64,000 bases of DNA from the IMG/VR virus record IMGVR_UViG_3300030099_004448, positions 124,001-188,000 of that record. One strand, 5' to 3'. Position numbers and translations under genes: made by a program. Positions 10,653 to 55,291 of the stretch are shown here, piece after piece (position 1 is the stretch's first letter; each line of letters starts with the position of its first letter). The notes under the pieces were generated by a model. That model saw only the letters and a list, made by a program, of their open reading frames with translations, was not told where the DNA came from and searched no databases.

Positions 10653-10664
10653 TTCTTACCCTCC

Positions 10665-28452: not shown

Positions 28453-29011
28453 CATCGTTCGTGACGAAGTAAAGTCATTAGATATTGATCATCTCAAAGC
28501 TCTGTCACTCAATCCTAATGATTGGCAGGCAGCAGGTGTCAGTGAGTATCGACTCTATGCATATCTGTCTACTTTCTTTAATAAGACTACCATTCTAGAC
28601 ATTGGTACTAGAACTGGTGGTTCTGCCCTTTCACTTTCATACAATCCACAGAACACTGTACGCAGTTATGATCTTGTGGAACAGGGTGCAAGTACTATCA
28701 AAAAAGATAATCTTTCATTCTTCATTGGTAATTTCATGGAGGATGAAGATATCGACTGGGATAATGTTTCTATTGTCATGATCGATGTTGATCCTCACGA
28801 TGGTGCTCAGGAACGAGTCATGATGGACTGGTTGCGAGATAAAGGTTGGAAGGGTATCATGCTTCATGATGATATCGGTCCTGGTTGGCCTGATATCCAA
28901 CTCATGTGGGATGAAATTCCCGAACCTAAAATTGATGTTACTGAGATCGCTCACATGAGTGGTACTGGTCTTGTCAATTTTGGTGAAGCACACGAAGTCT
29001 CTGTTGTATGA
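28442..29011 (+). CDS. Class I SAM-dependent methyltransferase-like protein
   Basis: ILDIGTRTGGSA motif I; IDVDPHDG; LHDD. Confidence 0.7.
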   Translation: MKIDIVRDEVKSLDIDHLKALSLNPNDWQAAGVSEYRLYAYLSTFFNKTTILDIGTRTGGSALSLSYNPQNTVRSYDLVEQGASTIKKDNLSFFIGNFMEDEDIDWDNVSIVMIDVDPHDGAQERVMMDWLRDKGWKGIMLHDDIGPGWPDIQLMWDEIPEPKIDVTEIAHMSGTGLVNFGEAHEVSVV

Positions 29012-29862: not shown

Positions 29863-30071
29863 AACTACTTACACTTGAAGATTATCAGAAGGCAGGTGAG
29901 ACTTTTTGGCCAAAGTATTGGTATGTTGCCAAAGAACTTGGTGAAGATGCCAAGGCAGAGGACATTTTGAAGTGCATGGAAGCTGTTGGTACAGTTGCAC
30001 TGAGATTCAAGATGGAAGAGAAAGAAGGTCCGTTCGGTTTTAACAAAACAGAAAAAAATAATGAAGATTAA
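29859..30071 (+). CDS. Small hypothetical protein
   Basis: ORF coupled to both neighbours. Confidence 0.65.
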   Translation: MKLLTLEDYQKAGETFWPKYWYVAKELGEDAKAEDILKCMEAVGTVALRFKMEEKEGPFGFNKTEKNNED

Positions 30072-30852
30072 TTTGATTTGCAACGACTCATTGTTGCCCT
30101 CTACATCAGACAAAAACACTGCTAAGAATACTGAATGGGTCTATGATGGATCGGGTGCGGTGAGTTTGTATGTCAATCAGAAATCTTTAGATATATTGCA
30201 AGATGTCTCTAGCACGCCTAAGTATATTTGGCTATTAGAGTCAAAACAAATTATCCAGGGGATCTATGATTGGATTCTTACAAACTATGACTTTGTTGCT
30301 TCCAGAGTGGACGGTATTTTTAGTTGCGATAAAGAACTCTGCGAAAAATATCCGAAGTTCTTTTACGCACTGAGTAACGCTGCACCATGGATTGAAGAAC
30401 GTCAGATCTATGAGAAGACTAAACTAGTCTCCATGATTTCTTCAAACAAAGCAATGGTTCCTGGTCATCGCAAGAGACTGGAATTCGTCCAAAAATTTAG
30501 AGATCAAGTTGATCTTTATGGTAGGGGATTTAATGACCTTCCCCGTAAGGAAGAGGGTATTCGAGATTACATGTTCTCTGTGGCAGTAGAGAACGCCGTC
30601 TATGATACATACTTTACGGAGAAACTTACAGACTGTTTCGCCACAGGAACGATTCCTGTCTTCTACGGTTGTAGAGGAGTCACAGAATATTTCAACGAAG
30701 ATGGAATTATATTCCTAGATGATGACTTTGACATTTCCACACTGACTGAAGATCTTTATCATTCCAAATTGGATGCGGTTAAAGATAACTTTGAACGTGC
30801 CAACAACCTGCCAGTGGCAGAAGATTATCTATATGAAACTTATTGGAAATGA
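30061..30852 (+). CDS. Glycosyltransferase, GT10 (alpha-1,3-fucosyltransferase)-like
   Basis: YMFSVAVEN...YFTEKLTDCFATGTIPVFYG, the GT10 signature. Confidence 0.8.
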   Translation: MKINLICNDSLLPSTSDKNTAKNTEWVYDGSGAVSLYVNQKSLDILQDVSSTPKYIWLLESKQIIQGIYDWILTNYDFVASRVDGIFSCDKELCEKYPKFFYALSNAAPWIEERQIYEKTKLVSMISSNKAMVPGHRKRLEFVQKFRDQVDLYGRGFNDLPRKEEGIRDYMFSVAVENAVYDTYFTEKLTDCFATGTIPVFYGCRGVTEYFNEDGIIFLDDDFDISTLTEDLYHSKLDAVKDNFERANNLPVAEDYLYETYWK

Positions 30853-31514
30853 GTAGTCGATTTAGTTATTTTGGAGAGAATGACATCACACTCACTGGTG
30901 TCATTCACGTCGGTGCCCACAGGGGTGAAGAGGTCAATGAATATGAAGACCTTGGCGCTAAACAAGTCATTTGGGTTGAAGCGAACCCTGATGTATTTGA
31001 AGAGATGCGTGTTGCATTGACTAATGCTGAATCTACTATTGAATCTCATGCATTTCAATACGCTGCAAGTACAGAGGATCATGCTACTGTAAAGTTCAAC
31101 AGATATTATGGACCCGATGCTGGTTATCTTAGGGGTAACAAGGGATGTTCATCTCTTCTGAAAGCAGAGGGTAGATTTGAAGCCTGGTATAAAGATACAA
31201 TCGAAGTAGAAACCATTACTATTGATACTCTTTTAGAAGAGAATGACTTCAAAGTAGAAGACTTCCAACTCCTAAACATGGATGTTCAGGGTGCTGAGTT
31301 AATGGTTTTGAGGGGTTCTGAAAAAGTCCTAGATAATGTGAAGTGGGTTACCACTGAAGCAACCTGGGAAGATCCTGATTACATTGACAACGTAATGTAT
31401 GATGAGTTAAAATCTTTCTTGGAATCTAAAGGATTTGTTGAGACACAAATTATTCCCCATGCAGAGAACTGGGGTGATGTTCTTTTTGTAAAGGAGACCC
31501 ATGAACAGAGTTAA
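30849..31514 (+). CDS. FkbM-family methyltransferase
   Basis: HVGAHRGEE, VEANP, TIDTLL, LNMDVQGAELMVLRG. Confidence 0.88.
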   Translation: MSSRFSYFGENDITLTGVIHVGAHRGEEVNEYEDLGAKQVIWVEANPDVFEEMRVALTNAESTIESHAFQYAASTEDHATVKFNRYYGPDAGYLRGNKGCSSLLKAEGRFEAWYKDTIEVETITIDTLLEENDFKVEDFQLLNMDVQGAELMVLRGSEKVLDNVKWVTTEATWEDPDYIDNVMYDELKSFLESKGFVETQIIPHAENWGDVLFVKETHEQS

Positions 31515-32259
31515 GGATTTTCAAGAGTTAGAAACAAGAATCGTGACATGGATTAAAGATTATGTCACTAAGAACAAACTGAATAGTCTTGTAGTCGGGG
31601 TATCTGGAGGCATTGATTCTGCAGTAGTCTCGACTCTTTGTGCTAGAACTGGTCTGCCGACCTATGTTCTCTCGATGCCACTGAACTCAAGTTCTGCAAA
31701 CGATGACCTTTCGGATTCATACTCTAATTTCCTTGAGGACAATTATGAGAATGTAACTAAAATTCGAGTGGATCTAGGTAAAGTTTATCAGTCATTCATG
31801 GACAGTCTTGACTTCTGGTGTGGTGATGGTGAATATACGACGAGTGGTCTAGCAAATGCGAATACTAAATCTCGTATGCGTATGGTAACTTTGTATCAAG
31901 TTGCAGGAACCACTGGTGGAATTGTTGTGGGAACAGGAAATAAGGTTGAAGATTATGGAGTTGGGTTCTATACTAAGTACGGTGACGGTGGTGTAGACAT
32001 TGCACCTATCGCAGATCTATACAAGACTGAAGTATGGGAACTTGGTAAACACCTTGGTGTTGATCAACGTATCATTGATGCTCCTCCTACTGATGGTCTT
32101 TGGGATGACAGTCGAACTGATGAAGATCAGATTGGTGCATCCTATGAAGATCTAGAATATGCCATGGAACATGGAACTGGTCCTGCAGTCCGAATCCTCC
32201 ATGACTATCATACAAAAAACAAGCACAAAATGAATCCTATCCCGACTTTTGAACTATGA
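31501..32259 (+). CDS. nadE: NH3-dependent NAD+ synthetase
   Basis: GVSGGIDSAV (PP-loop), NTKSRMRM, GTGNKVE, TKYGDGGVD, PIADLYKTEV, PPTDGLW. Confidence 0.93.
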   Translation: MNRVKDFQELETRIVTWIKDYVTKNKLNSLVVGVSGGIDSAVVSTLCARTGLPTYVLSMPLNSSSANDDLSDSYSNFLEDNYENVTKIRVDLGKVYQSFMDSLDFWCGDGEYTTSGLANANTKSRMRMVTLYQVAGTTGGIVVGTGNKVEDYGVGFYTKYGDGGVDIAPIADLYKTEVWELGKHLGVDQRIIDAPPTDGLWDDSRTDEDQIGASYEDLEYAMEHGTGPAVRILHDYHTKNKHKMNPIPTFEL

Positions 32260-33401
32260 AAATTGGTCTTATTGGTGCAGGAAGACTCGGTATCTGTCTT
32301 GCTCTCTTGATCGAGAGGGCTGGGTATAATGTTTTGGTATCTGATATTCGTCCTGATTACGTTGACGCCTTAAATAGGAAGGAGATCGTAACGGAGGAAC
32401 CTGATGTCCAGTGGCTCCTTAAACAAACGGAAAGATTCGAGGCGACTTGGGAAAACCAACGTGTCATCGACGAGTGCGACTTTATTATTTGTCTTGTTGC
32501 AACTCCTTCTCTTAATGATGGTTCTTATGATATAAGTTCTGTTTGGAATGTTGTTGAAGACTTCAAAAAGTCTGAATCAAAACTAAACGGAAAAACTCTG
32601 GTGGTTGGATGTACAACTAACCCAGGAGATTGTGAGAAATTTAGTGAAGAGCTTTCATACTTTGGAGTGAATGTCGTTTACAATCCTGAATTTATTGCAC
32701 AGGGTACTATTGTTAGTGATTTGCAAAATGCAGATATGGTTCTCATCGGTGGTGCTGATGATGAGACCTATGAGTTCATGCAAGAAATTTATAGTCGCAT
32801 CCAAGCAAGTCCGCCTCGGTGGGGACGAATGTCTACAACTGCTGCAGAACTTGTAAAGATCGCAGTAAATTGTTTTCTGACTATGAAAATTAGTTATGCC
32901 AACATGGTTGGTGAAGTCATGATTCAAGCAGGTCTTGCGGATGAAATCGAGGGAGTCATGCAAGCCATCGGAGACGACTCTAGAATCGGAAATAAATATC
33001 TTAAGTTCGGGTATGGATTTGGTGGTCCATGTCTTCCAAGAGACAATCGTGCCTTTGCATCATTTGCATCTAAGGTTGGTGTCAAGTATAATCTTGGTGA
33101 GACTACTGATAACTTCAATGACGAACATGCGAAGTTCCTCTGTAATTACTATTTGAGCAAGAACAAAGATAGTAAACCCTTCTACTTCCGATATGTTTCA
33201 TATAAGGAAGGAACGGACATCCTTACGGAAAGTCAACAGTATCGCCTCTGCGAGGATCTTTTGTATCAAGGATACACTTGTTATGTTGACGACAACGAAA
33301 GTATTATCACCCAACTAAAACAAAATTCCAAATTAGATGTCACTAGACTTAAGTTTGGAAAACCACCAGAAGATGTACAAGTTATTGAGATTGACCTATG
33401 A
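32256..33401 (+). CDS. ugd: UDP-glucose/GDP-mannose 6-dehydrogenase family protein
   Basis: IGAGRLG, VATPS, YNPEFIAQG, AELVK...N, GFGGPCLPRD. Confidence 0.88.
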   Translation: MKIGLIGAGRLGICLALLIERAGYNVLVSDIRPDYVDALNRKEIVTEEPDVQWLLKQTERFEATWENQRVIDECDFIICLVATPSLNDGSYDISSVWNVVEDFKKSESKLNGKTLVVGCTTNPGDCEKFSEELSYFGVNVVYNPEFIAQGTIVSDLQNADMVLIGGADDETYEFMQEIYSRIQASPPRWGRMSTTAAELVKIAVNCFLTMKISYANMVGEVMIQAGLADEIEGVMQAIGDDSRIGNKYLKFGYGFGGPCLPRDNRAFASFASKVGVKYNLGETTDNFNDEHAKFLCNYYLSKNKDSKPFYFRYVSYKEGTDILTESQQYRLCEDLLYQGYTCYVDDNESIITQLKQNSKLDVTRLKFGKPPEDVQVIEIDL

Positions 33402-34258
33402 TCGGGTACAACAGACTCGGAAGTAACGGACGTTTGGGAAACCAAATGTTTCAATATGCATCATTAAGAGGCATTGCAGATAAAAATGGATATGATTGGT
33501 GTATTCCTCCTGAGGAATATGATCATAAGGATAACTATGGTTTGTTTGAAACTTTCAAACTAATTAGTGTTGCGCCAAAGAATATTGGATTTGTTCAGGG
33601 TGATTATGTGCAAGAAAATGATCATTGTTTTTTAGAAGACTTTTTCAATGTTCTTCCAGACAACGTTAGTTTAGATGGATACTTTCAAACAGAAAAATAC
33701 TTCTCGCACATTAGAGAAGAAATACTCGCGGATTACACATTCAGGGACGATTTCTTCCTTCCTTGTAAACAGTATGTTGATAGTCTGGATGTGCCTCCTA
33801 TCTTCCTGCATATTCGTCAGTCTGATAACATCGGAAGAGAAGAATACCACCCCATTCTTCCCCTTACATATTATGAAGAAGCTCTGAAAGAGTTTCCTGA
33901 AGATACCCCTTGTTTTGTTCTTACAGACGATATTGAGTGGTGTAAGAAACAACCGTTCTTTGATAATGATAGATTCATGTTCAATGAGAACAATGATCGG
34001 TATCAATACCAGACTATTGATGGTCTTGGACGTATGCAGAATACTCTTCTGCCCCAGGTTGATCTCTGTCTTATGAGTCTTTGTTCTGGTGCTATCATTG
34101 CAAACTCATCATTCTCTTGGTGGGGAGCATGGTTGCAGGATGATGCGGGTAAGGTTGTTGCACCTAATCCTAAGAAGTGGTTTGGTACTGCCATGACGCA
34201 TCTAGATACCTCAGACATCGTGCCTCATCGTTGGATTATTAAAGAGTGGAGTAAGTAA
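33398..34258 (+). CDS. GT11 alpha-1,2-fucosyltransferase-like #1
   Basis: GRLGNQMFQYA, GYFQTEKYF, HIR, IIANSSFSWWGAWL. Confidence 0.92.
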   Translation: MIGYNRLGSNGRLGNQMFQYASLRGIADKNGYDWCIPPEEYDHKDNYGLFETFKLISVAPKNIGFVQGDYVQENDHCFLEDFFNVLPDNVSLDGYFQTEKYFSHIREEILADYTFRDDFFLPCKQYVDSLDVPPIFLHIRQSDNIGREEYHPILPLTYYEEALKEFPEDTPCFVLTDDIEWCKKQPFFDNDRFMFNENNDRYQYQTIDGLGRMQNTLLPQVDLCLMSLCSGAIIANSSFSWWGAWLQDDAGKVVAPNPKKWFGTAMTHLDTSDIVPHRWIIKEWSK

Positions 34259-35154
34259 TGGCTGTAACATTTAAAGGACTTGGTAACGAGGGTCGCCTTG
34301 GTAACCAAATGTTTCAATATGCCTTTGTCCGAGGTGTGGCTGCAAACCGTGGATTTGATTGGATGATCCCTGGCCCAAATGCAGATAGACTTGATAACTA
34401 TGGTTTGTTCGATGCATTTGAACTAACCAACTGCGATCTAAATAGGAACACTGGAGAACCCTTCTACAAAACAGTAGAATATAGGGATATGCACTTCAAT
34501 GAAGAAATCTATGACCGTTGCGAGGACAATACCAATTTCTCTGGTAATTTCCAAACGGAGAGATATTTTGAGACAATCGCGGCGTCTATCCGTGAGGATT
34601 TCACTTTTAAAAAGGCGTATCTGGAACCGTGCCAAGATTTTATTGATAGTCTTGGTGGACGTGATGAGTGTATCTTTTTGCACGTTCGTAGAGGTAATCC
34701 GAATCTTACTGGACGTAGAGGGGAAAAGTGGTCTTATCAGATGGTGCAAGAATACCACCCTCTCTGTAAAGCTGAATATTATGTACGGGCCCTCCAAGAG
34801 TTCCCCGAAGACAAAACAGTCATCGTCGTCTCAGACGTAATCGACTGGTGTAAGAAACAACCCTATCTTCAGGGAGATCGATTCCAATTCTCAGACTCAT
34901 CTTATGAGGTCTTTGGTGATGGTGCATCCGTTCCTTATGTTGACCTCTGTTTAATGAGTCTTTGTGGTGGTGCTATCATCGCCAACTCTTCTCTATCATG
35001 GTGGGGTGCATGGTTGCAAGGTGATACAGGAAAGGTAGTTGTACCCGATCCCTGGTTTGGACCTGCATATGACCACTACAACATGAAGGATATGATTCCA
35101 GATCGATGGGTCAAACTCCACAACGATCCATCCCCAGTTACTCCAGAACAATGA
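34258..35154 (+). CDS. GT11 alpha-1,2-fucosyltransferase-like #2
   Basis: GRLGNQMFQYA, HVRRG, IIANSSLSWWGAWL. Confidence 0.92.
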   Translation: MAVTFKGLGNEGRLGNQMFQYAFVRGVAANRGFDWMIPGPNADRLDNYGLFDAFELTNCDLNRNTGEPFYKTVEYRDMHFNEEIYDRCEDNTNFSGNFQTERYFETIAASIREDFTFKKAYLEPCQDFIDSLGGRDECIFLHVRRGNPNLTGRRGEKWSYQMVQEYHPLCKAEYYVRALQEFPEDKTVIVVSDVIDWCKKQPYLQGDRFQFSDSSYEVFGDGASVPYVDLCLMSLCGGAIIANSSLSWWGAWLQGDTGKVVVPDPWFGPAYDHYNMKDMIPDRWVKLHNDPSPVTPEQ

Positions 35155-35966
35155 AAGATTTAACATTCCTATTACCATGTCGCATTGAGTCTGAAGATCG
35201 ACTCAAAAATGTAATTACATCTACGACATATCTCCTCAAGAACTTTCCAGAAGCAAAAGTAATTCTGAAAGAAGTTGATACCAGGTCACACTTCAAGTTT
35301 CGTGCCCTACCTATCATCAAAAAGTATGTAAATACGGATCAACTCACTCACATCTTTGAGGAGAGTAATGAGAAGTTCTTTCATAAGACTCGTATCTTGA
35401 ATGATCTTTTGGTTGCTTCTGATACTTCTATCGTTTATAATCATGACGTGGATGTAGTTCTTCCCAAAGAAAGTTATGAACTCGCATACGCTGCAATTAA
35501 AAAGGGTCAATCTGATGCAGTATATCCTTTTGGTTGCGGAGTCTATCAATGGGCTGTAAACTATTCCGAATCAATTTTCAGTCAGTTCTTGGATTCTGAT
35601 TTTGATTTCAGTACACTTGATGAAGGTAAATTTAGAGTTGCTTCATCTATTGGTTGGGGTCAAATGATCAAAAGAGATACTGAGATTGAAGTTGGTATGT
35701 GGAATGAAAACTTCATCTCATGGGGTGCGGAGGATTGTGAGTTCTACTTCCGTCTGAATAGTTTTGGTCGAAAGGTGGGTAGAGTTCTTGGTGACATCTA
35801 TCACTTTGAACACGGTAGAACATTCAACTCGCACTACCATAATCCCAAGTTCATGGATAACCACAATCTATGGCAAGATATTAGAACGTGGGATGCCGAT
35901 AAACTTATTGAGTATTATCAAAAACAAGATTACAACGCAAAGAGGTTAGAAGAACTGTCATGCTAG
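35151..35966 (+). CDS. GT-A fold glycosyltransferase (GT2/GT7C-like)
   Basis: FHKTRILN, HDVD (DxD), WNENFISWGAEDCEF, YHFEH. Confidence 0.85.
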   Translation: MKDLTFLLPCRIESEDRLKNVITSTTYLLKNFPEAKVILKEVDTRSHFKFRALPIIKKYVNTDQLTHIFEESNEKFFHKTRILNDLLVASDTSIVYNHDVDVVLPKESYELAYAAIKKGQSDAVYPFGCGVYQWAVNYSESIFSQFLDSDFDFSTLDEGKFRVASSIGWGQMIKRDTEIEVGMWNENFISWGAEDCEFYFRLNSFGRKVGRVLGDIYHFEHGRTFNSHYHNPKFMDNHNLWQDIRTWDADKLIEYYQKQDYNAKRLEELSC

Positions 35967-36814
35967 CAATTAATGAGCTCGGGAACATGGGTCGTCTAGG
36001 AAACCAGATGTTCCAATATGCAGCAACGCGAGGACTTGCAGCTGCAAAGGGGTATGAATGGTGTATTCCACCTTTTACGACTCCCAGGATTGATAACTAC
36101 AGTCTTGCTAATTGTTTTACCATGGAGAGTGTTACTCCTAGTAATCAATACATCCTTGATCGTGGACATGCTCCAGTAGTTATGGAAAAACAGTTCCACT
36201 TCGATGAGGAACTGATGCAATTGTGTCCCAATGATGTTTCTTTGTATGGATTTTTCCAGACTGAGAAGTATTTTGCACACATTCGAGATGAAATTCGTAG
36301 GGACTTTACTTTCCATGAAGATCTGACGGTTCCCATCCAAGGATTCCTTAACGATCTGAAAGATCCTATCTTCTTGCATGTACGTCGTGGTGATCCCAAC
36401 CTTGTCGATGCTCGTGGATTTAAGTGGTCTTACACTCAGTGTTCTTCTATGCACCCGCCACAAGGCGTTGAGTACTACGAAGAGGCGTTGAAACAATTCC
36501 CAGACGATCAAGAGGTTGTCGTCGTCTCAGACTCGCCTGAGTGGGTTATGGAACAGGAACTATTCAAACCTGATCGTTTCTTTGTTTCTACACCCGAAGA
36601 GAAGTATCCTGATGGATCTTATACTCCTTATATTGACCTCTGTTTGATGGCGAATTGTAAGGGTGCTATCATTGCAAACTCTACTCTTTCTTGGTGGGGT
36701 GCATGGTTGCAGAATGGTGCTGGTAAAGTCATTGCACCTAAGAACTGGTTCGGTCCAGATTACGCTGATAAAGATACTAAAGATTTGTACTGTGAGGGTT
36801 GGGAAGTTATTTGA
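35960..36814 (+). CDS. GT11 alpha-1,2-fucosyltransferase-like #3
   Basis: GRLGNQMFQYA, GFFQTEKYF, HVRRGD, ANSTLSWWGAWL. Confidence 0.92.
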   Translation: MLAINELGNMGRLGNQMFQYAATRGLAAAKGYEWCIPPFTTPRIDNYSLANCFTMESVTPSNQYILDRGHAPVVMEKQFHFDEELMQLCPNDVSLYGFFQTEKYFAHIRDEIRRDFTFHEDLTVPIQGFLNDLKDPIFLHVRRGDPNLVDARGFKWSYTQCSSMHPPQGVEYYEEALKQFPDDQEVVVVSDSPEWVMEQELFKPDRFFVSTPEEKYPDGSYTPYIDLCLMANCKGAIIANSTLSWWGAWLQNGAGKVIAPKNWFGPDYADKDTKDLYCEGWEVI

Positions 36815-37605
36815 TGGATAAGAATAAGTCTGTATCTAAACTGAAAGGTATGGGACCCATCTATTACATCAACTTAGATGGGCAACCAGAACGCAAACAG
36901 TACATGGAAGACATGTTTGCACATTGGGAAATTGAAAACTACGAACGTATTTCTGCATATGATGGTAGAGAGGATGATCTAAGCGACATCCTCCACGGTC
37001 GTTATCCAGAAAATATGAGTTCTGGTGAGATTGGGTGTGTAACCTCTCACCTTAAACTCCTTAAACATTTTCTAGAGACATCTGATGCACCATACTGTGT
37101 GGTGATGGAAGATGATGTTGATATTAATGTTGCTAAGTATTGGACTTTCACTTGGAATCAACTTTATGCAAGATTCCCCTATGATTATGATGTTGTTCAG
37201 TTGGCAGTCATCTGCCCTGGTACACTTCACGTCAATCTACACAGGAGATTTGTAAACGATTTCTCCACGGCGTGTTATGTCATTACACGTCACCATGCGG
37301 AAAAGGTGGTTCGCCTCCATTGTCGGGGGGAAAAGTATAAACTAGACTATAAAATCAAGCCACGTGCTGTTGCAGACGATTTGATCTATAACTCTGGTAA
37401 TACGTTCGCCTTGCCTATATTTCTCTATAAGATTGAGTTGGGGTCCTCAATTCATCCTGAACATATTGAGATTTTCCATCGAGGATCACATGACGGTTTA
37501 CGAGAACTCTGGGAAAGACAAGGATCGACACTAGAAATTGATAGATTGATGGAGTGGGATCCGTATTTGGGACGAACGTCAGAAGGTCCTCAAAAAAATA
37601 CTTGA
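36814..37605 (+). CDS. GT25-family glycosyltransferase
   Basis: YYINLD...ERKQYM, GEIGCVTSH, VVMEDDV, STACYVIT. Confidence 0.85.
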   Translation: MDKNKSVSKLKGMGPIYYINLDGQPERKQYMEDMFAHWEIENYERISAYDGREDDLSDILHGRYPENMSSGEIGCVTSHLKLLKHFLETSDAPYCVVMEDDVDINVAKYWTFTWNQLYARFPYDYDVVQLAVICPGTLHVNLHRRFVNDFSTACYVITRHHAEKVVRLHCRGEKYKLDYKIKPRAVADDLIYNSGNTFALPIFLYKIELGSSIHPEHIEIFHRGSHDGLRELWERQGSTLEIDRLMEWDPYLGRTSEGPQKNT

Positions 37606-38612: not shown

Positions 38613-41003
38613 ATGTTAACCAACACAATTACGGATGGAGTAAAGGAACGTCTTCTGTACACACTAGGAAAGCGTCCCGAATCTGCCTCTGCACACGATG
38701 TCTACATGGCACTTTGTTATGCCGTTAGAGATCGAATGATTGATAATCATTTAGTTGAAAAGCCATATAAGAAGGAAGTTGCATATTTGTCTGCAGAGTT
38801 CCTTATTGGACCGCAGTTGAGTAACAACTTACTCAATTTGGATATTCGCAAAGAAGCTGCTGCAGCAGTTGGTCAGTTTGGATATGATTTGGATGAGATT
38901 TTAGAATTGTCTGAAGAACCTGGACTTGGAAATGGTGGTCTAGGTAGACTTGCTGCATGTTACATGGAATCCATGGCAACTCTAAAAGTTCCTGCCACTG
39001 GATATGGTATTAGATATAAGTACGGTATTTTCAAACAAACAATCCGTGACAATCAACAGGTAGAAGTCACCGATAATTGGTTGCATGGAGATTGGCCATG
39101 GGAAGTTTGTTATCCAGATGAATCTGTCATGATCGGATTCGGGGGAAAGGTAGAACACTATGAGTTTGATGATAATGACCATAGAGTTCGTTGGGCACCT
39201 CAACAACATGTGGTTGCAGTTCCTTATGATGTTTTGCAAGCAGGATATAAAGTAGATAGTTGTGCAAAGATTAGACTCTGGAGAGCAGACGCTATTGATG
39301 TGTTTGACTTCAAAGCATTCAACCAGGGAGACTATCTGGGATCCGTAGAGAACAGTGTAACCACGGAGACTATCTCAAAAGTTCTTTATCCAAATGATGG
39401 AACCACTCAAGGAAAAGAACTGAGATTAAAACAGCAGTTCTTCTTTGTGAGTGCTTCTCTTCAGGACATGATCAGAAGTCTCAAAGAACGTGATCTACCT
39501 CTCGAAGAGTTCTACAACTATTATCAAGTTCAGTTAAATGATACTCATCCATCAGTTGCGGTTGCAGAACTAATGAGACTTCTTATGGATGATCACCACA
39601 TGGAGTGGGATCTTGCATGGGATATTACAAGTAAGTCGATTGCATATACCAATCACACACTACTTCCAGAGGCACTGGAGAAGTGGAGTGTAAGTCTGTT
39701 TGAAAAACTCCTACCCAGACACTTGGAGATCATTTATGAAATCAATTCCAGATTCCTCCAGATCGTCAGAATGCACTACCCAGGAGACGAAGAAATCCTC
39801 AGAAAACTGTCCATCATTGATGAGACGGGTGGTAGATTTGTCCGCATGGCCAATCTTGCAACAGTCGGATCTCACCATATCAATGGTGTTGCTTCACTTC
39901 ACTCAGATCTGATCACTAAGAACCTCATGCCTGAGTTCTATGACCTTTGGCCTCACAAGTTCACCAATGTAACCAATGGTGTGACTCCTCGTCGCTGGTT
40001 GGCAGACTCTAACCCTGCACTTGCTGAGGTTCTTACAAATTGCGTTGGTGATGAATGGGTTACTGATATGACTCGTCTCAGTGATCTAGAGAAGTTTGCT
40101 GATGATCCTATTGTTCTTGAAAAGATTGGTGCGACAAAACTCATTGGTAAACATAAACTGGCACAATATATACAGAAGACACTTGGCATCTCAGTTGATC
40201 CGTCAAGTATGTTTGATGTACAAGTAAAGAGGATTCATGAATACAAACGACAGCATCTCCTTGCTCTATGGATTGTGTCTCGGTATTTGTATATCAAAAA
40301 TCATAAAGACGATTATGTTGTTCCACGTACAGTAATCTTTGGTGGTAAAGCCGCACCTGGTTACTATATGGCGAAAGAGATTATTCGTTTCATTTGTAAT
40401 CTTGCGGAGACTGTCAACTCAGATCCTGATATGGATGGAAAGTTGCGTGTGGTATTCCTACCTAACTATAGTGTGAAGTTGGGTGAGAAAGTCTATCCCG
40501 CTGCGGATCTCTCTGAACAGATCTCAACCGCAGGTAAGGAAGCATCTGGTACTGGTAATATGAAGTTCCAGATGAATGGTGCTCTGACTATTGGTACACT
40601 CGATGGTGCAAATGTAGAGATTCGTGACTTGGTAGGTGAAGAGAACTTCTTCCTCTTTGGTAATACTGAAGAAGAGATCGGTGATCTATGGAAGAATGGT
40701 TATGATCCTAAAGAACACATGAGTTCTGGATTGTTTGAGTCGATTGAATTAATCAAGTCTGGTCACTTCTCGAATGGTGATAAGAATGCATTTGTTTCTA
40801 TCATTGATAATCTGCTGCAGAGTGATCCATTCTGTGTCTGTGCAGACTTTGCAGATTATTGCCGTGCCCAGAACGTTGTAGATAACACCTGGGGTAATAG
40901 AGAGGAATGGAATCGTAGATCTCTGATGAACATTGCTAGATCTGGATTCTTCTCATCCGATAGATCTATTCAAGATTACTGTGACAACATCTGGAAAATA
41001 TGA
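38613..41003 (+). CDS. glgP: Glycogen/starch/alpha-glucan phosphorylase (GT35)
   Basis: YLSAEFLIG, GLGNGGLGRLAAC, QLNDTHP, YTNHTLLPEALE, VKRIHEYKRQHL, GGKAAPGY and the PLP-lysine motif EASGTGNMKF; 796 aa, uninterrupted. Confidence 0.97.
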   Translation: MLTNTITDGVKERLLYTLGKRPESASAHDVYMALCYAVRDRMIDNHLVEKPYKKEVAYLSAEFLIGPQLSNNLLNLDIRKEAAAAVGQFGYDLDEILELSEEPGLGNGGLGRLAACYMESMATLKVPATGYGIRYKYGIFKQTIRDNQQVEVTDNWLHGDWPWEVCYPDESVMIGFGGKVEHYEFDDNDHRVRWAPQQHVVAVPYDVLQAGYKVDSCAKIRLWRADAIDVFDFKAFNQGDYLGSVENSVTTETISKVLYPNDGTTQGKELRLKQQFFFVSASLQDMIRSLKERDLPLEEFYNYYQVQLNDTHPSVAVAELMRLLMDDHHMEWDLAWDITSKSIAYTNHTLLPEALEKWSVSLFEKLLPRHLEIIYEINSRFLQIVRMHYPGDEEILRKLSIIDETGGRFVRMANLATVGSHHINGVASLHSDLITKNLMPEFYDLWPHKFTNVTNGVTPRRWLADSNPALAEVLTNCVGDEWVTDMTRLSDLEKFADDPIVLEKIGATKLIGKHKLAQYIQKTLGISVDPSSMFDVQVKRIHEYKRQHLLALWIVSRYLYIKNHKDDYVVPRTVIFGGKAAPGYYMAKEIIRFICNLAETVNSDPDMDGKLRVVFLPNYSVKLGEKVYPAADLSEQISTAGKEASGTGNMKFQMNGALTIGTLDGANVEIRDLVGEENFFLFGNTEEEIGDLWKNGYDPKEHMSSGLFESIELIKSGHFSNGDKNAFVSIIDNLLQSDPFCVCADFADYCRAQNVVDNTWGNREEWNRRSLMNIARSGFFSSDRSIQDYCDNIWKI

Positions 41004-41686
41004 ACATTTGGGTTGGGTATGACACCCGTGAACACTGGGCATTCAAGGTCTGTGATTACAGCATCCGCAAATACAGACCTGATGCAATCGTAAAACCGAT
41101 TGAACAACGAAACACAAGACTTCTTGGTCTCTACGATAGACCTATAGATGAGAATGCCTCTACTGAGTTTTCTCTAACTAGATTTCTAACGCCTGCACTA
41201 TCAAACTTTAAGGGATGGTCACTTTACTGTGATTGTGACTTTCTCTTTTTGAATGATGTTAAAAAGTTATTTGATCTTGCTGATCCTAAGTACGCTGCAA
41301 TGGTGGTCAAACATGACTATAAACCAAAGAGTAATACAAAGATGGATGGTCAAATTCAGTTTCCATATCCTAGAAAGAACTGGAGTTCTTTGATCTTATT
41401 CAATAACGAACATCCATCCCATAAGTTTTTGGATGTCAATGGTATGACTCCTGCAGAGCTGCACCAGTTTGACTGGATTGCAGACAAAGATCTGGGTGAA
41501 TTGCCTAAACGGTGGAATTGGTTGGTTGGTTATTGCACCGATGAAGACCTATGGTCTGATATTCCAGCTGCATTACATTACACAGATGGTGGACCATGGT
41601 TTGAAGAGACTAAAGACTGTGATTACTCTGGTTTGTGGAATCAATATTATGAGGAGTGTCTAGATGCAAATAAAATATATCGTTGA
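41000..41686 (+). CDS. GT8-like glycosyltransferase resembling plant CDI
   Basis: VGYDTRE, STEFSLTRFL, DCDF (DxD), VVKHDY, KMDGQ, YPRKNWSS, HYTDGGPWF. Confidence 0.85.
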   Translation: MNIWVGYDTREHWAFKVCDYSIRKYRPDAIVKPIEQRNTRLLGLYDRPIDENASTEFSLTRFLTPALSNFKGWSLYCDCDFLFLNDVKKLFDLADPKYAAMVVKHDYKPKSNTKMDGQIQFPYPRKNWSSLILFNNEHPSHKFLDVNGMTPAELHQFDWIADKDLGELPKRWNWLVGYCTDEDLWSDIPAALHYTDGGPWFEETKDCDYSGLWNQYYEECLDANKIYR

Positions 41687-46335: not shown

Positions 46336-46351
46336 TTTTTTGTTCAAAACA

Positions 46352-52224: not shown

Positions 52225-52287
52225 CTCAGCTGGTAGAGCGCCTGCTTTGCAAGCAGGATGTCAGCGGTTCGAGTCCGCTATTCTCCA
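52215..52287 (+). tRNA. tRNA-Ala(UGC)
   Basis: Acceptor GGGGAAT/ATTCTCC (G3-U70), anticodon loop TTTGCAA. Confidence 0.96.
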
Positions 52288-52737: not shown

Positions 52738-53018
52738 ACATAATTTTACTGTTCTCGTTTTGTGTAGTCGCCTGGTTCATTGCCTCGGATGAGTCGGTTG
52801 CCGAATTCGTGGTATTAGTGGGAGAATACATAAAGACAAAGACACGGATTTCTTGGTGGTGGATAACCAATAATCCAAGAAATCCCATTGTAAAATTCTT
52901 AATTAACAGAAGGTCTCACCGAGAGGCTGAGAAATTGCTCAAGATTATTAATGAAGAACGCAATAGTAATCCCAGTTCGATTGAACAGTCAGAGACTTCC
53001 CAAGAAAGCTCTGATTGA
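52728..53018 (+). CDS. Hypothetical membrane protein
   Basis: N-terminal TM. Confidence 0.6.
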   Translation: MELNIILLFSFCVVAWFIASDESVAEFVVLVGEYIKTKTRISWWWITNNPRNPIVKFLINRRSHREAEKLLKIINEERNSNPSSIEQSETSQESSD

Positions 53019-53661
53019 TATCGAAGGTAAAACCTTAATTCAAAGAGTAGTCGGGCAGTGTCTTAAAACAGATCTGCCTGTGTATCTTATTACAGACAGT
53101 CAAGAAATTGCTGATTCCGTGTGTCCCCGTAGGACCACGGTTCTTTTTTTAAGAGAAGAAGCATGCTCGGGAACAGAAAGAATTGCAAATGCAATTGATA
53201 TGATTCCTGCGGATGGTGTTATTAATGTTCAAGGTGATCAACCGTTCGTCGATCCTCAAGAGATCTTGGTCATGAATGAACATATGATTGCAAACAATTC
53301 AACGTATCCCGTGATCACACCATCTAAGATCTACGAGAGGGATCATCCATATGCTAAGGACCCGAACAAAGTTAAAGTTGTTTCTTCTAAGTATGGTCGT
53401 GCTCTTTACTTTAGCCGCCATGCCATCGGCGATGAGAGAGTTAGAATCCACATGGGAATTTATGGATACCGAAGATCTGCATTAGAAAGGTATCAATACA
53501 TGAAACCAACTCCTTTAGAACAAAGAGAGAGGTTGGAACAGTTGAGATTCCTTGAAAATGATATTTCTATCTACACTTATGAAACAGAAAGAGATCTGTT
53601 TTCTGTAGACACGCCACAAGACCTAGAACACGCTAGAGAGATAGCTTGGGAATACGACTAA
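52951..53661 (+). CDS. kdsB: 3-deoxy-manno-octulosonate cytidylyltransferase (CMP-Kdo synthetase)
   Basis: IPVRLNSQRLPKKAL, SGTERI, INVQGDQP, ALYFSR, LEQRERLEQLRFL, SVDTPQDL. Confidence 0.93.
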   Translation: MKNAIVIPVRLNSQRLPKKALIDIEGKTLIQRVVGQCLKTDLPVYLITDSQEIADSVCPRRTTVLFLREEACSGTERIANAIDMIPADGVINVQGDQPFVDPQEILVMNEHMIANNSTYPVITPSKIYERDHPYAKDPNKVKVVSSKYGRALYFSRHAIGDERVRIHMGIYGYRRSALERYQYMKPTPLEQRERLEQLRFLENDISIYTYETERDLFSVDTPQDLEHAREIAWEYD

Positions 53662-54357
53662 GGGTATTTGGGAGTGTCGGTCTGAGAGTGCCCTAGAGGG
53701 ATCTGGATGCACCTCAGCGAAGAATGCTTCTGCACCCCAGATTTTTGCACTCTGTGCAAGAGGTTGTGCATAGAACCAGTTACCACCAGTTGTAGATTCT
53801 CCACCTTCCTGGGTAGAGTGAGTTGAATCAAAACAAACTTTGAATCCAGCACTCTTCAGTTTATGAATAGTTCGGAAGTCAACCACCAGGTTGTCATAAC
53901 CGAAAGATGTACCACGTTCGCAGATATAAAAGTCTTCGCAACCATATGCTTCCATGTTCTCACCTAGGAGAATTGCCTGACGAGGGGACATAAACTGACC
54001 CTTCTTGACATTGACTAATTTACCAGACTCTGCAACTGCTTGAAGCAGGTCGTTTTGACGACACAAAAATGCAGGGACTTGGTATGCGTCTACATAGTTT
54101 GATAGGATCGCAACGTCTTGTGGTTCATGGACATCGGTGATGACTTTGTAACCTGCATCACGCAGTTTTTCAAAGATCTTGATTGCGAATCTAAGTCCAT
54201 GTCCACGAAAACTCTTATGACTGGATCGGTTTGCCTTGTCAAAGGATGCCTTGAAGTAATAATCTACATCTTCGGGTAGATTTTCAGTAATAGTTTTCGC
54301 CACTAGAAATGCATCTTCTTCAGACTCTAGTAGACATGGGCCTGCAAACAGCTTCAT
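53623..54357 (-). CDS. kdsA: Kdo-8-phosphate synthase
   Basis: AGPCLLES, KASFDKANRSS..SFRG, TDVHE, PAFLCRQ, NVKKGQFM, ERGTSFGY, FDSTHS. Confidence 0.95.
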   Translation of the reverse strand: MKLFAGPCLLESEEDAFLVAKTITENLPEDVDYYFKASFDKANRSSHKSFRGHGLRFAIKIFEKLRDAGYKVITDVHEPQDVAILSNYVDAYQVPAFLCRQNDLLQAVAESGKLVNVKKGQFMSPRQAILLGENMEAYGCEDFYICERGTSFGYDNLVVDFRTIHKLKSAGFKVCFDSTHSTQEGGESTTGGNWFYAQPLAQSAKIWGAEAFFAEVHPDPSRALSDRHSQIPLVVFPSYLSSVF

Positions 54358-54391
54358 TCTATGTTAAACTACTTGTACTAATTATACCACG

Positions 54392-55291
54392 ATGACACAG
54401 TATTTTCCAGAGTATGATCGACTAAAAGAATGTTGGGTAGGTCGTGCATACGATTCTTCGCTCGTAACTGATACATTTGTTAAAGATATCCTTGACGAAA
54501 CAGAAGAGGATCTGTCAAACTTTAGTCAAATGTTGAGAGATCTGGGAGTAGAAGTTAAAAGACCGACTTATAAAAATCCCGATGTAACTCGGAAACCACA
54601 ACTTCTACATGCACGGGACCATCTCCAGTATCTTAACGGCAAACTTTATATTGGTCCAAGGTATGAAGATAATATTGCTGATTGGTTGGAGTTGCTTGAT
54701 AATCGAACTCCTTTTGTCACTCTGGATAATCTATGCGCGCCTTCTGTAGTTCGTGCTGACAGAGTTTACTTTGATGCGGTATCATGGACACGCAAACGTT
54801 TTGAATATTTTCAACATGGGAATCCTGATCTGCCTTGTGTTTTTGAACGACTCTCTTCTCGCGATTTTAACATCGAACGTCATACAGATGGTGTATTCTG
54901 TGTAGTTAAAGAAGGTGTAATCATCTCCACCCCACAGGGACGTAACCTAGAGTATCTGTTTCCAGAGTGGGATATCTTATATCTTGATCAAAATACTCAG
55001 GATCTTAATGATATGTCGAAGACCAAGGGTAAGTTTATTTGGTCTCCAGATCAGATCCCTGATGATTACAGAGATTGGGTAGGATATTCACCCGAAACTT
55101 TCTTTGATGTCAATGCACTTGCTGTTGATGAGAAACACTTTATGTGTACTCGATACAATAAACAGGTGTTTGATTTCCTGAAGAAACATAAGGTGGAACC
55201 TATCATTGTTCCTTTCCGACATAGATATTTGTGGGACGGCGGACTTCATTGTATGACGTTTGATTTTATTAGAGATGCATATCAACAGTAG
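54392..55291 (+). CDS. Amidinotransferase (glycine/inosamine amidinotransferase superfamily)
   Basis: ARD, RHTDGVF, DVNAL and C-terminal GGLHCMT (catalytic Cys). Confidence 0.85.
   Translation: MTQYFPEYDRLKECWVGRAYDSSLVTDTFVKDILDETEEDLSNFSQMLRDLGVEVKRPTYKNPDVTRKPQLLHARDHLQYLNGKLYIGPRYEDNIADWLELLDNRTPFVTLDNLCAPSVVRADRVYFDAVSWTRKRFEYFQHGNPDLPCVFERLSSRDFNIERHTDGVFCVVKEGVIISTPQGRNLEYLFPEWDILYLDQNTQDLNDMSKTKGKFIWSPDQIPDDYRDWVGYSPETFFDVNALAVDEKHFMCTRYNKQVFDFLKKHKVEPIIVPFRHRYLWDGGLHCMTFDFIRDAYQQ

What the first reader, a model, noticed from the sequence alone, without database searches (positions are those of the whole stretch)
52951..54357. Kdo biosynthesis pair kdsB/kdsA arranged tail-to-tail with overlapping 3' ends
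Seen: kdsA is the only convincing minus-strand gene after about 14.6 kb. It converges on kdsB with a 39-bp overlap and is separated from the divergent amidinotransferase by only 34 bp, which suggests an inversion or separate acquisition. Established: KdsA and KdsB give activated CMP-Kdo, and LPS of some marine Synechococcus has been reported to lack Kdo. Inference: the phage may add a sugar its host does not make to a virion or surface glycan; the overlap could also give antisense regulation.
Basis: partly seen in the sequence, partly recalled or inferred. Interest (0 to 1): 0.6.

Follow-up and report, generated by a model that had tools for sequence, protein, structure and literature searches.

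The report
Cyanophage Kdo-sugar gene pair, tail-to-tail
A large marine cyanophage carries two intact genes for making the activated sugar CMP-Kdo, inherited as a fixed tail-to-tail overlapping pair; its hosts already have the whole pathway, so the phage probably boosts a host sugar supply rather than adding a new sugar.

Summary
kdsB (52951-53661, +) and kdsA (53623-54357, -) converge with a 39-bp overlap. kdsA lies 34 bp from a divergent 299-aa gene and is the only large minus-strand ORF after 14.6 kb. Both genes are intact and under purifying selection, and they score as KdsA (metal-dependent type) and KdsB.

The window comes from a 239-kb T4-like cyanomyovirus close to Synechococcus phage S-SCSM2R. 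The 2025 paper on that phage already reported kdsA/kdsB as a first for cyanophages.

What I add:
- **Ancestral overlap, not an inversion.** Every lineage of this phage KdsA clade that has both genes shows the overlap (36, 39, 45 or 60 bp), in three genome contexts and both orientations.
- **Partial pathway.** The phage has no kdsD, kdsC or known Kdo transferase.
- **Hosts have the pathway.** All five Synechococcus/Cyanobium genomes tested carry clustered kdsA-D, at no more than 50% identity to the phage genes, and no WaaA.
- **A travelling partner.** A GT8-like glycosyltransferase travels with kdsA/kdsB in most of the phage lineages checked and sits in most host kds clusters.
- **Mosaic pair.** kdsB has been swapped between close phages.

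"A sugar the host cannot make" is not supported. Antisense regulation remains untested.

The parts
52951..53661 (+). kdsB, CMP-Kdo synthetase (3-deoxy-manno-octulosonate cytidylyltransferase), 236 aa
   Evidence: Pfam CTP_transf_3, E = 5e-39. NCBIfam NF003952 scores 217.6 bits, above the 193-bit cut-off; PseF scores only 23.8 bits. All 13 PDB hits are KdsB. dN/dS is 0.11 against L106. The protein is only 58.5% identical to S-SCSM2R KdsB.
53623..54357 (-). kdsA, Kdo-8-phosphate synthase of the metal-dependent type, 244 aa
   Evidence: Pfam DAHP_synth_1, E = 3e-44. NF003543 scores 276 bits, above the 242-bit cut-off. The best PDB match is Aquifex aeolicus KDO8PS 1FWN, 207 bits. Invariant residues are C8, H180, E215, D226 and the KANRSS motif. 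dN/dS is 0.02-0.12. The protein is 98.8% identical to S-SCSM2R KdsA.
53623..53661 (.). 39-bp shared 3' end: the last 12 codons plus stop of kdsB and of kdsA, read on opposite strands
   Evidence: The C-termini are ...DLEHAREIAWEYD* (KdsB) and ...PLVVFPSYLSSVF* (KdsA). Overlaps of 39, 39, 39, 36, 36, 45 and 60 bp occur in the related lineages. The fold energy is not unusual, with z = -1.95 and -1.42.
54381..54409 (-). sigma-70-like promoter candidate for kdsA (TGGAAA, 17-nt spacer, TATAAT with a TG extension), reaching into the first codons of the divergent gene
   Evidence: 10 of 12 matches, with TG before the -10 hexamer. The region-wide count of such sites equals the chance expectation. The TGnTATAAT element is kept upstream of kdsA in L106, L107 and L007, which has a different upstream neighbour, and in S-SCSM2R. 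A metatranscriptome contig ends at 54374, 7 nt below the -10 hexamer; contig ends are not proof of an RNA end.
54392..55291 (+). divergent neighbour, 299 aa, weakly amidinotransferase-like (guanidino-modifying fold with a C-terminal GGLHC motif); co-inherited with kdsA in one sub-lineage
   Evidence: No Pfam or NCBIfam hit. PDB matches are HsvA at E = 2e-4 and L-arginine:glycine amidinotransferase at 1e-3, over the C-terminal 75-85 residues only. It is 96.6% identical to S-SCSM2R ORF266, which was detected in that phage's virion proteome (PMC12801897). Nucleotide identity to S-SCSM2R is 87-98% from 53633 to 55252, against 50-57% in the flanks.
41000..41686 (+). GT8-like DxD glycosyltransferase, 228 aa, which travels with kdsA/kdsB in phages and sits between kdsA and kdsB in host genomes
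   Evidence: It co-occurs with the pair in the window, S-SCSM2R, L003, L007 and L109. Among deposited cyanophages only S-SCSM2R has it. It is 39% identical (E = 5e-47) to a host gene directly upstream of kdsB. Homologues lie in 15 of 20 host kds loci. The family is in 61 of 151 Cyanobiaceae genomes, and 57 of those have kdsA. The AlphaFold model (pLDDT 86) matches GT8/GT24 enzymes such as LgtC and glycogenin.
27352..37605 (+). context: phage glycan-synthesis block (GDP-mannose dehydratase, epimerase, GT10, FkbM methyltransferase, UDP-glucose dehydrogenase, three GT11, one GT2, one GT25)
   Evidence: Pfam hits.

Best explanation
**What it is.** This is an intact two-gene auxiliary metabolic module of a large T4-like cyanomyovirus.
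- KdsA condenses arabinose 5-phosphate with phosphoenolpyruvate to give Kdo-8-phosphate.
- KdsB activates free Kdo with CTP to give CMP-Kdo.

**What the phage lacks.** It encodes only these two steps. It must rely on the infected cell for arabinose-5-phosphate isomerase (KdsD), for the Kdo-8-phosphate phosphatase (KdsC, or another phosphatase) and for whichever transferase uses CMP-Kdo. The marine Synechococcus/Cyanobium genomes examined encode kdsA, kdsB, kdsC and kdsD. The module therefore most likely raises or sustains the cell's CMP-Kdo supply during infection. It does not introduce a foreign sugar.

**What the sugar is for (inferred).** I infer that it feeds a non-LPS, Kdo-containing surface glycan. 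The associated GT8-like transferase and the phage's many other glycan genes would take part.

**The arrangement.** The tail-to-tail overlap is an inherited feature of the module, not a local inversion. Once the two 3' ends share codons, the genes can only be separated by duplicating that stretch, so the layout persists. kdsA is the head of its own short transcription unit, with a host-type extended -10 promoter in the 34-bp gap.

**Shown:** gene identity, intactness, purifying selection, the conserved architecture, the missing pathway steps, the presence of the pathway in hosts, and the mosaic exchange of kdsB.

**Inferred:** the boosting role, the glycan target, the promoter, and persistence through constraint rather than through selection for regulation.
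For: **Enzyme identity and intactness.** Family scores exceed the curated cut-offs. The best PDB hits are KDO8PS and KdsB. Catalytic and metal residues are invariant. dN/dS is 0.02-0.12.

**The same layout is annotated in S-SCSM2R** (PMC12801897).

**The architecture is ancestral.**
- 39-bp overlap: window, S-SCSM2R, L106, L007-9.
- 36-bp overlap: L107/108, L211.
- 45-bp overlap: L109.
- 60-bp overlap: L003-6.
- All lengths are multiples of three, as expected from descent.
- In L007-9 the pair sits between an ndhD-like gene and the gp43 DNA polymerase, with kdsB as the reversed gene.
- The KdsA phage clade is monophyletic (SH-aLRT 99) and so is the KdsB phage clade (100).

**Missing steps in the 100%-complete phage record.** There is no match to KdsD/TIGR00393, KdsC/TIGR01670, SIS, Hydrolase_3, WaaA/PF04413, KpsS-C/PF05159 or MptE-like. 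HAD_2 gives only a 13-bit sub-threshold hit.

**Hosts.**
- kdsA, kdsB, kdsC and kdsD lie in one cluster in 5 of 5 genomes, and no WaaA was found.
- kdsA is in 66 and kdsD in 65 of 151 Cyanobiaceae genomes, with 64 genomes sharing both.

**GT8-like partner:**

**Presence in RNA libraries.** Relatives at 93-96% identity occur in marine metatranscriptome assemblies from three studies. One 1.4-kb contig spans both genes.
Against: - No direct evidence shows that Kdo levels change in infected cells, or where the sugar ends up.
- LPS of two marine Synechococcus strains lacks Kdo. No known Kdo transferase family was found in phage or hosts. The acceptor is therefore unknown.
- The GT8-like partner has the fold of UDP-hexose transferases, not of any known CMP-Kdo transferase.
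- The 244-aa KdsA subclade lacks about 10 C-terminal residues and has a 2-residue deletion in the active-site loop after the HST motif. Altered specificity is not excluded.
- KdsB is below the cut-offs of the strict equivalog models (TIGR00466: 136 against 155.2 bits; NF003948: 200 against 281 bits).
- The promoter-like site is one of eight in a region where chance gives 7.9. Part of it lies in coding sequence, which would also conserve it.
- Metatranscriptome contigs cannot show strand, RNA ends or true transcription.
- Two members of the KdsA phage clade, basal P0029 and long-branch P0034, have kdsA without an adjacent kdsB.
Confidence: 0.6

Rival explanations
1. One reading: the phage supplies a sugar that its host cannot make, and adds it to virions or to a surface glycan.
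For: Kdo is absent from the LPS of Synechococcus WH8102 and CC9311. No WaaA was found in five host genomes. About 57% of sampled Cyanobiaceae species, mostly with small genomes, have no kdsA or kdsD. S-SCSM2R also infects Prochlorococcus (PMC12801897). The phage carries many glycosyltransferases.
Against: All five Synechococcus/Cyanobium genomes tested have clustered kdsA-D. The phage has no arabinose-5-phosphate isomerase or SIS domain. In a host without KdsD, its KdsA would have no substrate. kdsA and kdsD co-occur almost perfectly in hosts (64 genomes share both, out of 66 and 65).
Confidence: 0.12
2. The overlap is kept because it is regulatory. Convergent transcription gives complementary 3' ends or polymerase collisions, which couple or time the expression of KdsA and KdsB.
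For: The overlap is retained across divergence to about 55% identity, and even where kdsB alleles have been exchanged. kdsA has its own promoter-like site. No terminator lies between the genes. A metatranscriptome contig spans the junction.
Against: The overlap length varies (36-60 bp). Its sequence is no better conserved than the rest of kdsA (0.87 against 0.93-0.98 identity to S-SCSM2R). No RNA structure is significant. Retention is also expected from simple constraint, because separating the genes needs a duplication. No strand-specific data exist.
Confidence: 0.2
3. The CMP-Kdo is used to glycosylate the virion itself rather than the host surface.
For: The genome encodes a large glycan toolkit. 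The neighbouring gene product was found in S-SCSM2R virion preparations. Giant viruses with predicted Kdo pathways (CroV, Fadolivirus) are discussed in the context of virion glycans (PMC9614988).
Against: No glycan data exist for any cyanomyovirus virion. The S-SCSM2R authors regard the non-structural proteins in the virion proteome as probably carried along or highly expressed. The kdsA, kdsB and GT8-like trio mirrors a host chromosomal cluster, which points to a cellular glycan.
Confidence: 0.1
4. The two enzymes make and activate a different ulosonic acid, not Kdo.
For: The 244-aa KdsA subclade has a shortened C-terminus and a 2-residue deletion in the substrate-closing loop. KdsB is below the strict equivalog cut-offs. 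The nearest non-phage KdsA relatives are short forms from polysaccharide clusters; the two that carry names are Gram-positive bacteria, which have no LPS.
Against: The KANRSS and QxPAFLxRQ motifs and all metal ligands are invariant. DAHP-synthase models score far lower (86 against 276 bits). PseF scores 24 bits against 218 bits for KdsB. The nearest relatives sit in kdsB-kdsA-kdsD-kdsC operons, which are true Kdo operons.
Confidence: 0.06
5. kdsA was inverted locally in this phage, and the overlap is a recent accident.
For: kdsA is the only large minus-strand gene in about 49 kb.
Against: The same convergent overlap occurs in seven lineages, in three genome contexts and in both orientations relative to the backbone.
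Confidence: 0.02

Closest known systems
KdsB/KdsA (ORF264/ORF265) of Synechococcus phage S-SCSM2R (PQ898602; BMC Biol 2025, PMC12801897)
   Same: The layout is the same: kdsB +, kdsA -, a 39-bp overlap, then the divergent 'glycine amidinotransferase'. KdsA is 98.8% identical and the neighbour 96.6%. The paper lists both genes as cell-wall synthesis and modification genes, and as the first kdsA/kdsB in a cyanophage.
   Different: KdsB is only 58.5% identical, so the allele has been replaced, with the breakpoint near 53.5-53.63 kb. The surrounding gene order differs: psbA and psbD lie upstream of the pair here and downstream there. The paper does not discuss the overlap, the missing kdsC/kdsD, the host pathway or the GT8-like partner.
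Bacterial Kdo pathway (KdsD, KdsA, KdsC, KdsB, then WaaA), as in E. coli and as clustered in marine Synechococcus
   Same: The enzyme families and catalytic residues are the same. The phage trio of kdsA, kdsB and the GT8-like gene mirrors the host cluster kdsA, GT8-like-kdsB, kdsC, kdsD.
   Different: Only two of the four steps are present. Identity to host proteins is 37-50% for KdsA and 38-44% for KdsB. Host genes are mostly divergent and never overlap 3' end to 3' end. One host (G002) has kdsD-kdsA-kdsC converging on kdsB, with a 13-bp kdsC/kdsB overlap. No WaaA was found in phage or host.
Predicted Kdo pathways of giant viruses (Cafeteria roenbergensis virus crov265-267; Fadolivirus)
   Same: These are virus-encoded Kdo-8-P synthase and cytidylyltransferase within a glycan gene cluster, and the use of the sugar is unknown (PMC9614988).
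   Different: CroV encodes all four steps as fused bifunctional proteins and infects a eukaryote. Here there are two separate, overlapping bacterial-type genes and the pathway is partial.
Viral LPS/glycan auxiliary metabolic genes in ocean viromes
   Same: kdsA and kdsB are reported among the commonest glycan auxiliary genes in surface-water viromes (PMC10653327). At least 559 IMG/VR stretches encode a KdsA relative. One environmental viral genome with KdsA is described in PMC5332604.
   Different: Those more distant viral kdsA genes (47% identity or less) have no adjacent kdsB, or a co-directional one. The convergent overlapping pair is specific to this cyanophage clade.

Membership tests
Kdo-8-phosphate synthase (KdsA), metal-dependent class | Scores above the curated cut-off of an equivalog model, and better than the DAHP synthase models | tested here: met
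   NF003543 scores 276 bits against a 242-bit cut-off. The best DAHP synthase model scores 86 bits. TIGR01362 scores 264 bits, below its 314-bit cut-off.
Kdo-8-phosphate synthase (KdsA), metal-dependent class | KANRS(S) motif and the Cys-His-Glu-Asp metal ligands (Cys in place of the Asn of metal-independent enzymes) | tested here: met
   AGPC (C8), KANRSS (41-46), THS (H180), EVH (E215) and SD (D226) are invariant in 15 sequences. They align to Aquifex 1FWN. The assignment of these residues as ligands rests on my knowledge of the Aquifex enzyme.
Kdo-8-phosphate synthase (KdsA), metal-dependent class | Full-length TIM barrel including the C-terminal helix | tested here: inconclusive
   The alignment to 1FWN covers residues 3-237 of the query and 6-244 of the 267-residue chain. 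The 244-aa subclade ends about 10 residues before its 252-258-aa relatives. No structure was predicted.
Kdo-8-phosphate synthase (KdsA), metal-dependent class | Catalyses A5P + PEP -> Kdo-8-P | not testable with these tools
   This needs an enzyme assay.
CMP-Kdo synthetase (KdsB) | Scores above a curated KdsB model cut-off, and far above other CMP-sugar synthetases | tested here: met
   NF003952 (a subfamily model) scores 217.6 bits against a 193-bit cut-off. The equivalog models are below their cut-offs (NF003948: 200 against 281; TIGR00466: 136 against 155.2). PseF scores 23.8 bits. All 13 PDB hits are KdsB.
CMP-Kdo synthetase (KdsB) | Catalyses Kdo + CTP -> CMP-Kdo | not testable with these tools
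   This needs an enzyme assay.
Complete virus-encoded Kdo pathway (as predicted for CroV) | Arabinose-5-phosphate isomerase (KdsD, SIS domain) is present | tested here: not met
   TIGR00393 and PF01380 find nothing at E <= 1 in the 238,937-bp record, which is rated 100% complete.
Complete virus-encoded Kdo pathway (as predicted for CroV) | Kdo-8-phosphate phosphatase (KdsC, HAD) is present | tested here: not met
   TIGR01670 and PF08282 find nothing. PF13419 gives only a 13-bit sub-threshold hit.
Complete virus-encoded Kdo pathway (as predicted for CroV) | A known Kdo transferase (GT30 WaaA, KpsS/KpsC) or an MptE-like candidate is present | tested here: not met
   PF04413, PF05159 and PF01973 find nothing. 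GT73 and GT99 were not tested.
Antisense-coupled convergent gene pair (regulatory overlap) | Transcripts from both strands extend through the shared region and affect each other | not testable with these tools
   Only unstranded contigs from RNA libraries were available. The physical overlap itself is confirmed.
GT8 retaining glycosyltransferases (for the associated gene 41000-41686) | GT-A fold with a DxD motif, resembling LgtC or glycogenin | tested here: met
   The DCD motif is invariant. Foldseek probability is 1.00 to 3tzt, 1g9r, 5gvw and glycogenin, with TM 0.5-0.62. Pfam PF01501 is below its cut-off (18.5 against 24.3 bits).

The most novel reading that the evidence does not exclude
The trio of kdsA, kdsB and the GT8-like transferase may mark an undescribed Kdo-containing glycoconjugate of marine picocyanobacteria that is not LPS. 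These organisms lack WaaA, and their LPS lacks Kdo. The trio is clustered in host chromosomes and was captured as a unit by several cyanophage lineages. On this reading, cyanophages deliberately rebuild that glycan during infection, and the fixed convergent overlap acts as a timing or dosage device for the two enzymes.
Probability: 0.2. Interest if true: 0.6.

Novelty: new member of a known kind. Interest (0 to 1): 0.35.

Why it matters
The presence of kdsA and kdsB in a cyanophage is already published, so the finding as stated is largely known. The comparison adds three things.

- **What the genes can do.** The phage makes only steps 2 and 4 of the pathway, and its hosts have all four. This is a flux-boosting gene set like other cyanophage metabolic genes, not a new sugar.
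- **An open question it exposes.** Marine Synechococcus keep a full Kdo pathway, although their LPS is reported to have no Kdo and no known Kdo transferase was found. A GT8-like gene linked to kdsA/kdsB in both hosts and phages is a concrete handle on that unknown glycan. The glycan could be a phage receptor or a shield.
- **A small evolutionary example.** The overlapping pair shows how a gene arrangement becomes locked in and then moves between phage genomes as a unit, while one half (kdsB) is still exchanged.

Tried and rejected
- **Missing pathway steps and transferases.** I searched the whole phage record for KdsD, KdsC, SIS, Hydrolase_3, HAD_2, WaaA, KpsS/C and MptE-like families. Nothing usable was found.
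- **The GT8-like gene as the missing Kdo transferase.** I rejected this on fold and motif. It is a DxD GT-A enzyme like the UDP-hexose transferases LgtC and glycogenin.
- **RNA structure or terminator at the overlap.** Fold z-scores are -1.95 and -1.42. Terminator-like sites occur at chance level and none lies between the genes.
- **Host origin of the phage genes.** Trees do not place phage KdsA with either Cyanobiaceae clade. KdsB is only weakly sister to them (SH-aLRT 83). The origin is left unresolved. These were quick trees with midpoint rooting. The non-cyanobacterial sample consists only of the top hits to the phage proteins.
- **Large unknown ORFs in a host kds locus.** The two ORFs beside kdsA in one host locus (594 and 617 aa) are not shared with other kds loci or with phages, apart from one related ORF in a second host locus (L202).
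- **PHROGs.** It has no family for either KdsA or KdsB.
- **Metatranscriptome contigs.** They show presence in RNA libraries only, with no strand or RNA ends.
- **Rfam on 45-58 kb.** It found only PhotoRC-II and tRNA-Ala.
Full report
**1. Where the window lies**

The window is bases 124001-188000 of a 238,937-bp virus record rated 100% complete. It carries psbA, psbD, a PhotoRC-II RNA, transaldolase, glycogen phosphorylase and a long glycan-synthesis block. It is therefore a large T4-like cyanomyovirus.

The nearest deposited genome is Synechococcus phage S-SCSM2R (244 kb, host WH7803). Shared segments are 82-85% identical at the DNA level.

**2. The observation**

- The overlap is 39 bp and the gap to the divergent gene is 34 bp.
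- After the minus-strand block that ends at 14549, no other minus-strand ORF exceeds 110 aa.
- S-SCSM2R annotates the same three genes in the same layout.

**3. Gene identity**

*The minus-strand gene is a Kdo-8-phosphate synthase.*
- NF003543 scores 276 bits, above its 242-bit cut-off. DAHP synthase models score 86 bits or less.
- The best solved relative is the Aquifex aeolicus enzyme.
- The protein starts MKLFAGPC, so it is not truncated at the N-terminus relative to that short, metal-dependent type.
- The Cys, His, Glu and Asp positions and the KANRSS motif are invariant across 15 relatives.
- The 244-aa subclade ends about 10 residues before its 252-258-aa relatives, and has a 2-residue deletion after the HST motif.

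*The plus-strand gene is a CMP-Kdo synthetase.*
- NF003952 scores 217.6 bits against a 193-bit cut-off. Every PDB hit is a KdsB, and PseF scores only 24 bits.
- It falls below the stricter equivalog cut-offs.

*Both genes are under purifying selection.* dN/dS is 0.02-0.12 for kdsA and 0.11 for kdsB.

**4. The arrangement is inherited**

Relatives of this KdsA at 55% identity or more form one clade (SH-aLRT 99). In every lineage of that clade where both genes are present, they converge and overlap:

| Lineage | Overlap | Context |
|---|---|---|
| Window, S-SCSM2R, L106 | 39 bp | same locus as the window |
| L007-9 (KdsA 79%) | 39 bp | between an ndhD-like gene and the gp43 DNA polymerase; kdsB is the reversed gene |
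| L107/108 and L211 (70% and 68%) | 36 bp | syntenic with the window, including the 299-aa neighbour and the radical SAM gene |
| L109 (57%) | 45 bp | small viral contig with GT8-like and GT25-like genes |
| L003-6 (55%) | 60 bp | the terminal genes of two convergent glycan operons |

All overlap lengths are multiples of three. That is what descent from one ancestral overlap predicts, because in-frame changes are the only ones tolerated.

Other arrangements occur elsewhere:
- More distant viral kdsA genes (47% identity or less) have no nearby kdsB, or a co-directional one.
- The nearest non-phage relatives have co-directional operons with kdsB immediately upstream of kdsA, and kdsD and a HAD phosphatase gene on the same strand.
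- Two members of the phage clade, basal P0029 and long-branch P0034, have kdsA alone.

A local inversion is therefore excluded. The pair behaves as a unit that has been placed at different genome sites.

**5. The pair is a mosaic**

Against S-SCSM2R, DNA identity changes sharply along the region:
- about 55% over most of kdsB;
- about 73% at 53513-53632;
- 87-98% from 53633 to 55252, which covers kdsA and the 299-aa gene;
- about 50% beyond that.

KdsA is 98.8% identical and KdsB only 58.5%. In the KdsB tree, the S-SCSM2R allele groups with the L107 type rather than with the window's allele. Likewise, L007 has a KdsA at 79% but a KdsB at 46%. kdsB alleles are therefore exchanged while the shared 3' end stays with kdsA.

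**6. What the phage lacks**

The whole record was searched for the rest of the pathway.
- No arabinose-5-phosphate isomerase or SIS domain.
- No KdsC or Hydrolase_3.
- No WaaA, KpsS/C or MptE-like protein.
- HAD_2 gives only a sub-threshold 13-bit hit.

The phage encodes steps 2 and 4 of a four-step pathway and no recognisable transferase.

**7. What the hosts have**

I reached named host genomes through the phage psbD.

*Five genomes examined in detail.* These are Synechococcus MIT S9451 and MIT S9452, two Synechococcus MAGs and Cyanobium BSA11S. Each has:
- kdsA at 41-48% identity and kdsB at 38-44%;
- kdsC and kdsD above their curated cut-offs, all in one cluster;
- no WaaA.

*A sample of 151 Cyanobiaceae species.*
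- kdsA-type matches occur in 66 genomes, excluding four 25%-identity hits. kdsD occurs in 65, and 64 genomes share both.
- Fifteen of the 20 negative genomes listed are 1.9 Mb or smaller.
- No host KdsA exceeds 50% identity to the phage protein.

*Gene order in hosts*. Across 20 host loci:
- 10 are divergent;
- 2 are convergent with kdsC in between;
- 1 is co-directional;
- 7 have no kdsB within 7 kb.

In MIT S9452 the order is kdsD-kdsA-kdsC converging on kdsB, with a 13-bp kdsC/kdsB overlap. Losing kdsC from such a cluster would give the phage layout. This is a hypothesis only, because the KdsA tree does not place the phage clade with Cyanobiaceae.

*Consequence.* The review literature confirms that LPS of WH8102 and CC9311 lacks Kdo. 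The hosts can nevertheless make CMP-Kdo and must use it for something else.

**8. A travelling partner**

- A 228-aa protein at 41000-41686 has homologues next to or near the pair in S-SCSM2R, L007, L109 and L003. It was not found in one 77%-complete related record.
- Among more than 50,000 deposited phage records, the only cyanophage with it is S-SCSM2R.
- It is 39% identical (E = 5e-47) to a host gene that overlaps the start of kdsB in MIT S9451.
- Homologues sit in 15 of 20 host kds loci, usually as a GT-kdsB operon between kdsA and kdsB.
- The family occurs in 61 of 151 Cyanobiaceae genomes, and 57 of those have kdsA. These counts are not phylogenetically independent.
- Its model (pLDDT 86) matches GT8/GT24 retaining transferases, and it has an invariant DCD motif.

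It is probably a UDP-hexose transferase working on the same glycan. It is not the Kdo transferase, which remains unidentified.

**9. Expression signals**

- A sigma-70-like site with an extended -10 (TGGAAA, 17-nt spacer, TGgTATAAT) lies at 54409-54381 on the minus strand, just upstream of kdsA.
- Such sites are no more frequent here than chance. However, a TGnTATAAT element is present upstream of kdsA in S-SCSM2R, L106, L107 and also L007, whose upstream neighbour is different.
- Marine metatranscriptome assemblies from three studies contain relatives at 93-96% identity. One 1.4-kb contig covers 52977-54374 and ends 7 nt below the -10 element.
- The tool warns that contigs cannot show strand, RNA ends or true transcription. 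I treat this as compatible with expression and no more.
- The overlap has no unusual fold energy.

**10. Comparison with what is known**

- S-SCSM2R's authors reported kdsA and kdsB as new for cyanophages. They grouped them with cell-wall synthesis and modification genes, and they found the neighbouring 'glycine amidinotransferase' in virion preparations.
- kdsA and kdsB are listed among common glycan auxiliary genes in surface viromes.
- At least 559 IMG/VR stretches encode a KdsA relative.
- CroV and Fadolivirus are predicted to encode the whole pathway.

The gene content is therefore known. The conserved overlap, the partial pathway, the host pathway and the GT8-like link are additions.

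**11. Verdict**

The most likely role is to sustain CMP-Kdo supply for a non-LPS surface glycan during infection (confidence about 0.6 for the package as a whole). Confidence is much higher for enzyme identity and the ancestral architecture, and lower for the physiological role. Interest is modest.

Noticed in passing
window 46596-46605: A run of 10 N lies inside psbA (46340-47387). It stands in for roughly 54 nt of D1 coding sequence, so ORF lists split the gene in two. It is an assembly gap or a masked stretch, not a broken gene.
   Followed up: partly
window 46221-46314 and 52215-52287: A PhotoRC-II RNA lies upstream of psbA (73 bits). A tRNA-Ala (tgc) lies about 660 bp upstream of kdsB.
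   Followed up: yes
window 54392-55291: The 299-aa 'amidinotransferase' is only weakly similar to amidinotransferases (HsvA, E = 2e-4; C-terminal GGLHC motif). Its S-SCSM2R orthologue was detected in virion preparations. Together with kdsA it forms the best-conserved block between the two phages (87-98% DNA identity, against 82-85% for psbA, psbD and the phosphorylase).
   Followed up: partly
window 41664-46162: Six consecutive ORFs of 223-284 aa lie in a low-GC stretch (about 0.32), right after the GT8-like gene. None of the six has a Pfam hit, and the two tested have no PHROG hit. They could be unrecognised glycan enzymes.
   Followed up: no
window 27352-37605 and 38613-41003: A dense glycan toolkit (GDP-mannose dehydratase, epimerase, GT10, FkbM methyltransferase, NAD synthase, UDP-glucose dehydrogenase, three GT11, one GT2, one GT25) is followed by a full-length glycogen phosphorylase (796 aa).
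   Followed up: partly
L199 (Synechococcus sp. MIT S9452) 5509-8778; L200 (MIT S9451) 6950-11821: Marine Synechococcus keep a complete kdsA-D cluster with an embedded GT8-like gene, yet no WaaA was found and their LPS is reported to lack Kdo. What these cells use Kdo for is unexplained.
   Followed up: partly
L007 3098-5274: In the TARA cyanophage contigs the kds pair sits beside a 512-aa NdhD-like (Proton_antipo_M) gene and a Glucosamine_iso family gene, between regA and the gp43 DNA polymerase. This is an unusual place for metabolic genes.
   Followed up: no
window 55260-57487: Downstream of the 299-aa gene lie a weak 2OG-Fe(II) oxygenase, a radical SAM protein and a small cupin (mannose-6-phosphate isomerase C-terminal type). 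The oxygenase and the radical SAM gene are syntenic with the pair in L107 and L211. No link to Kdo is evident.
   Followed up: no
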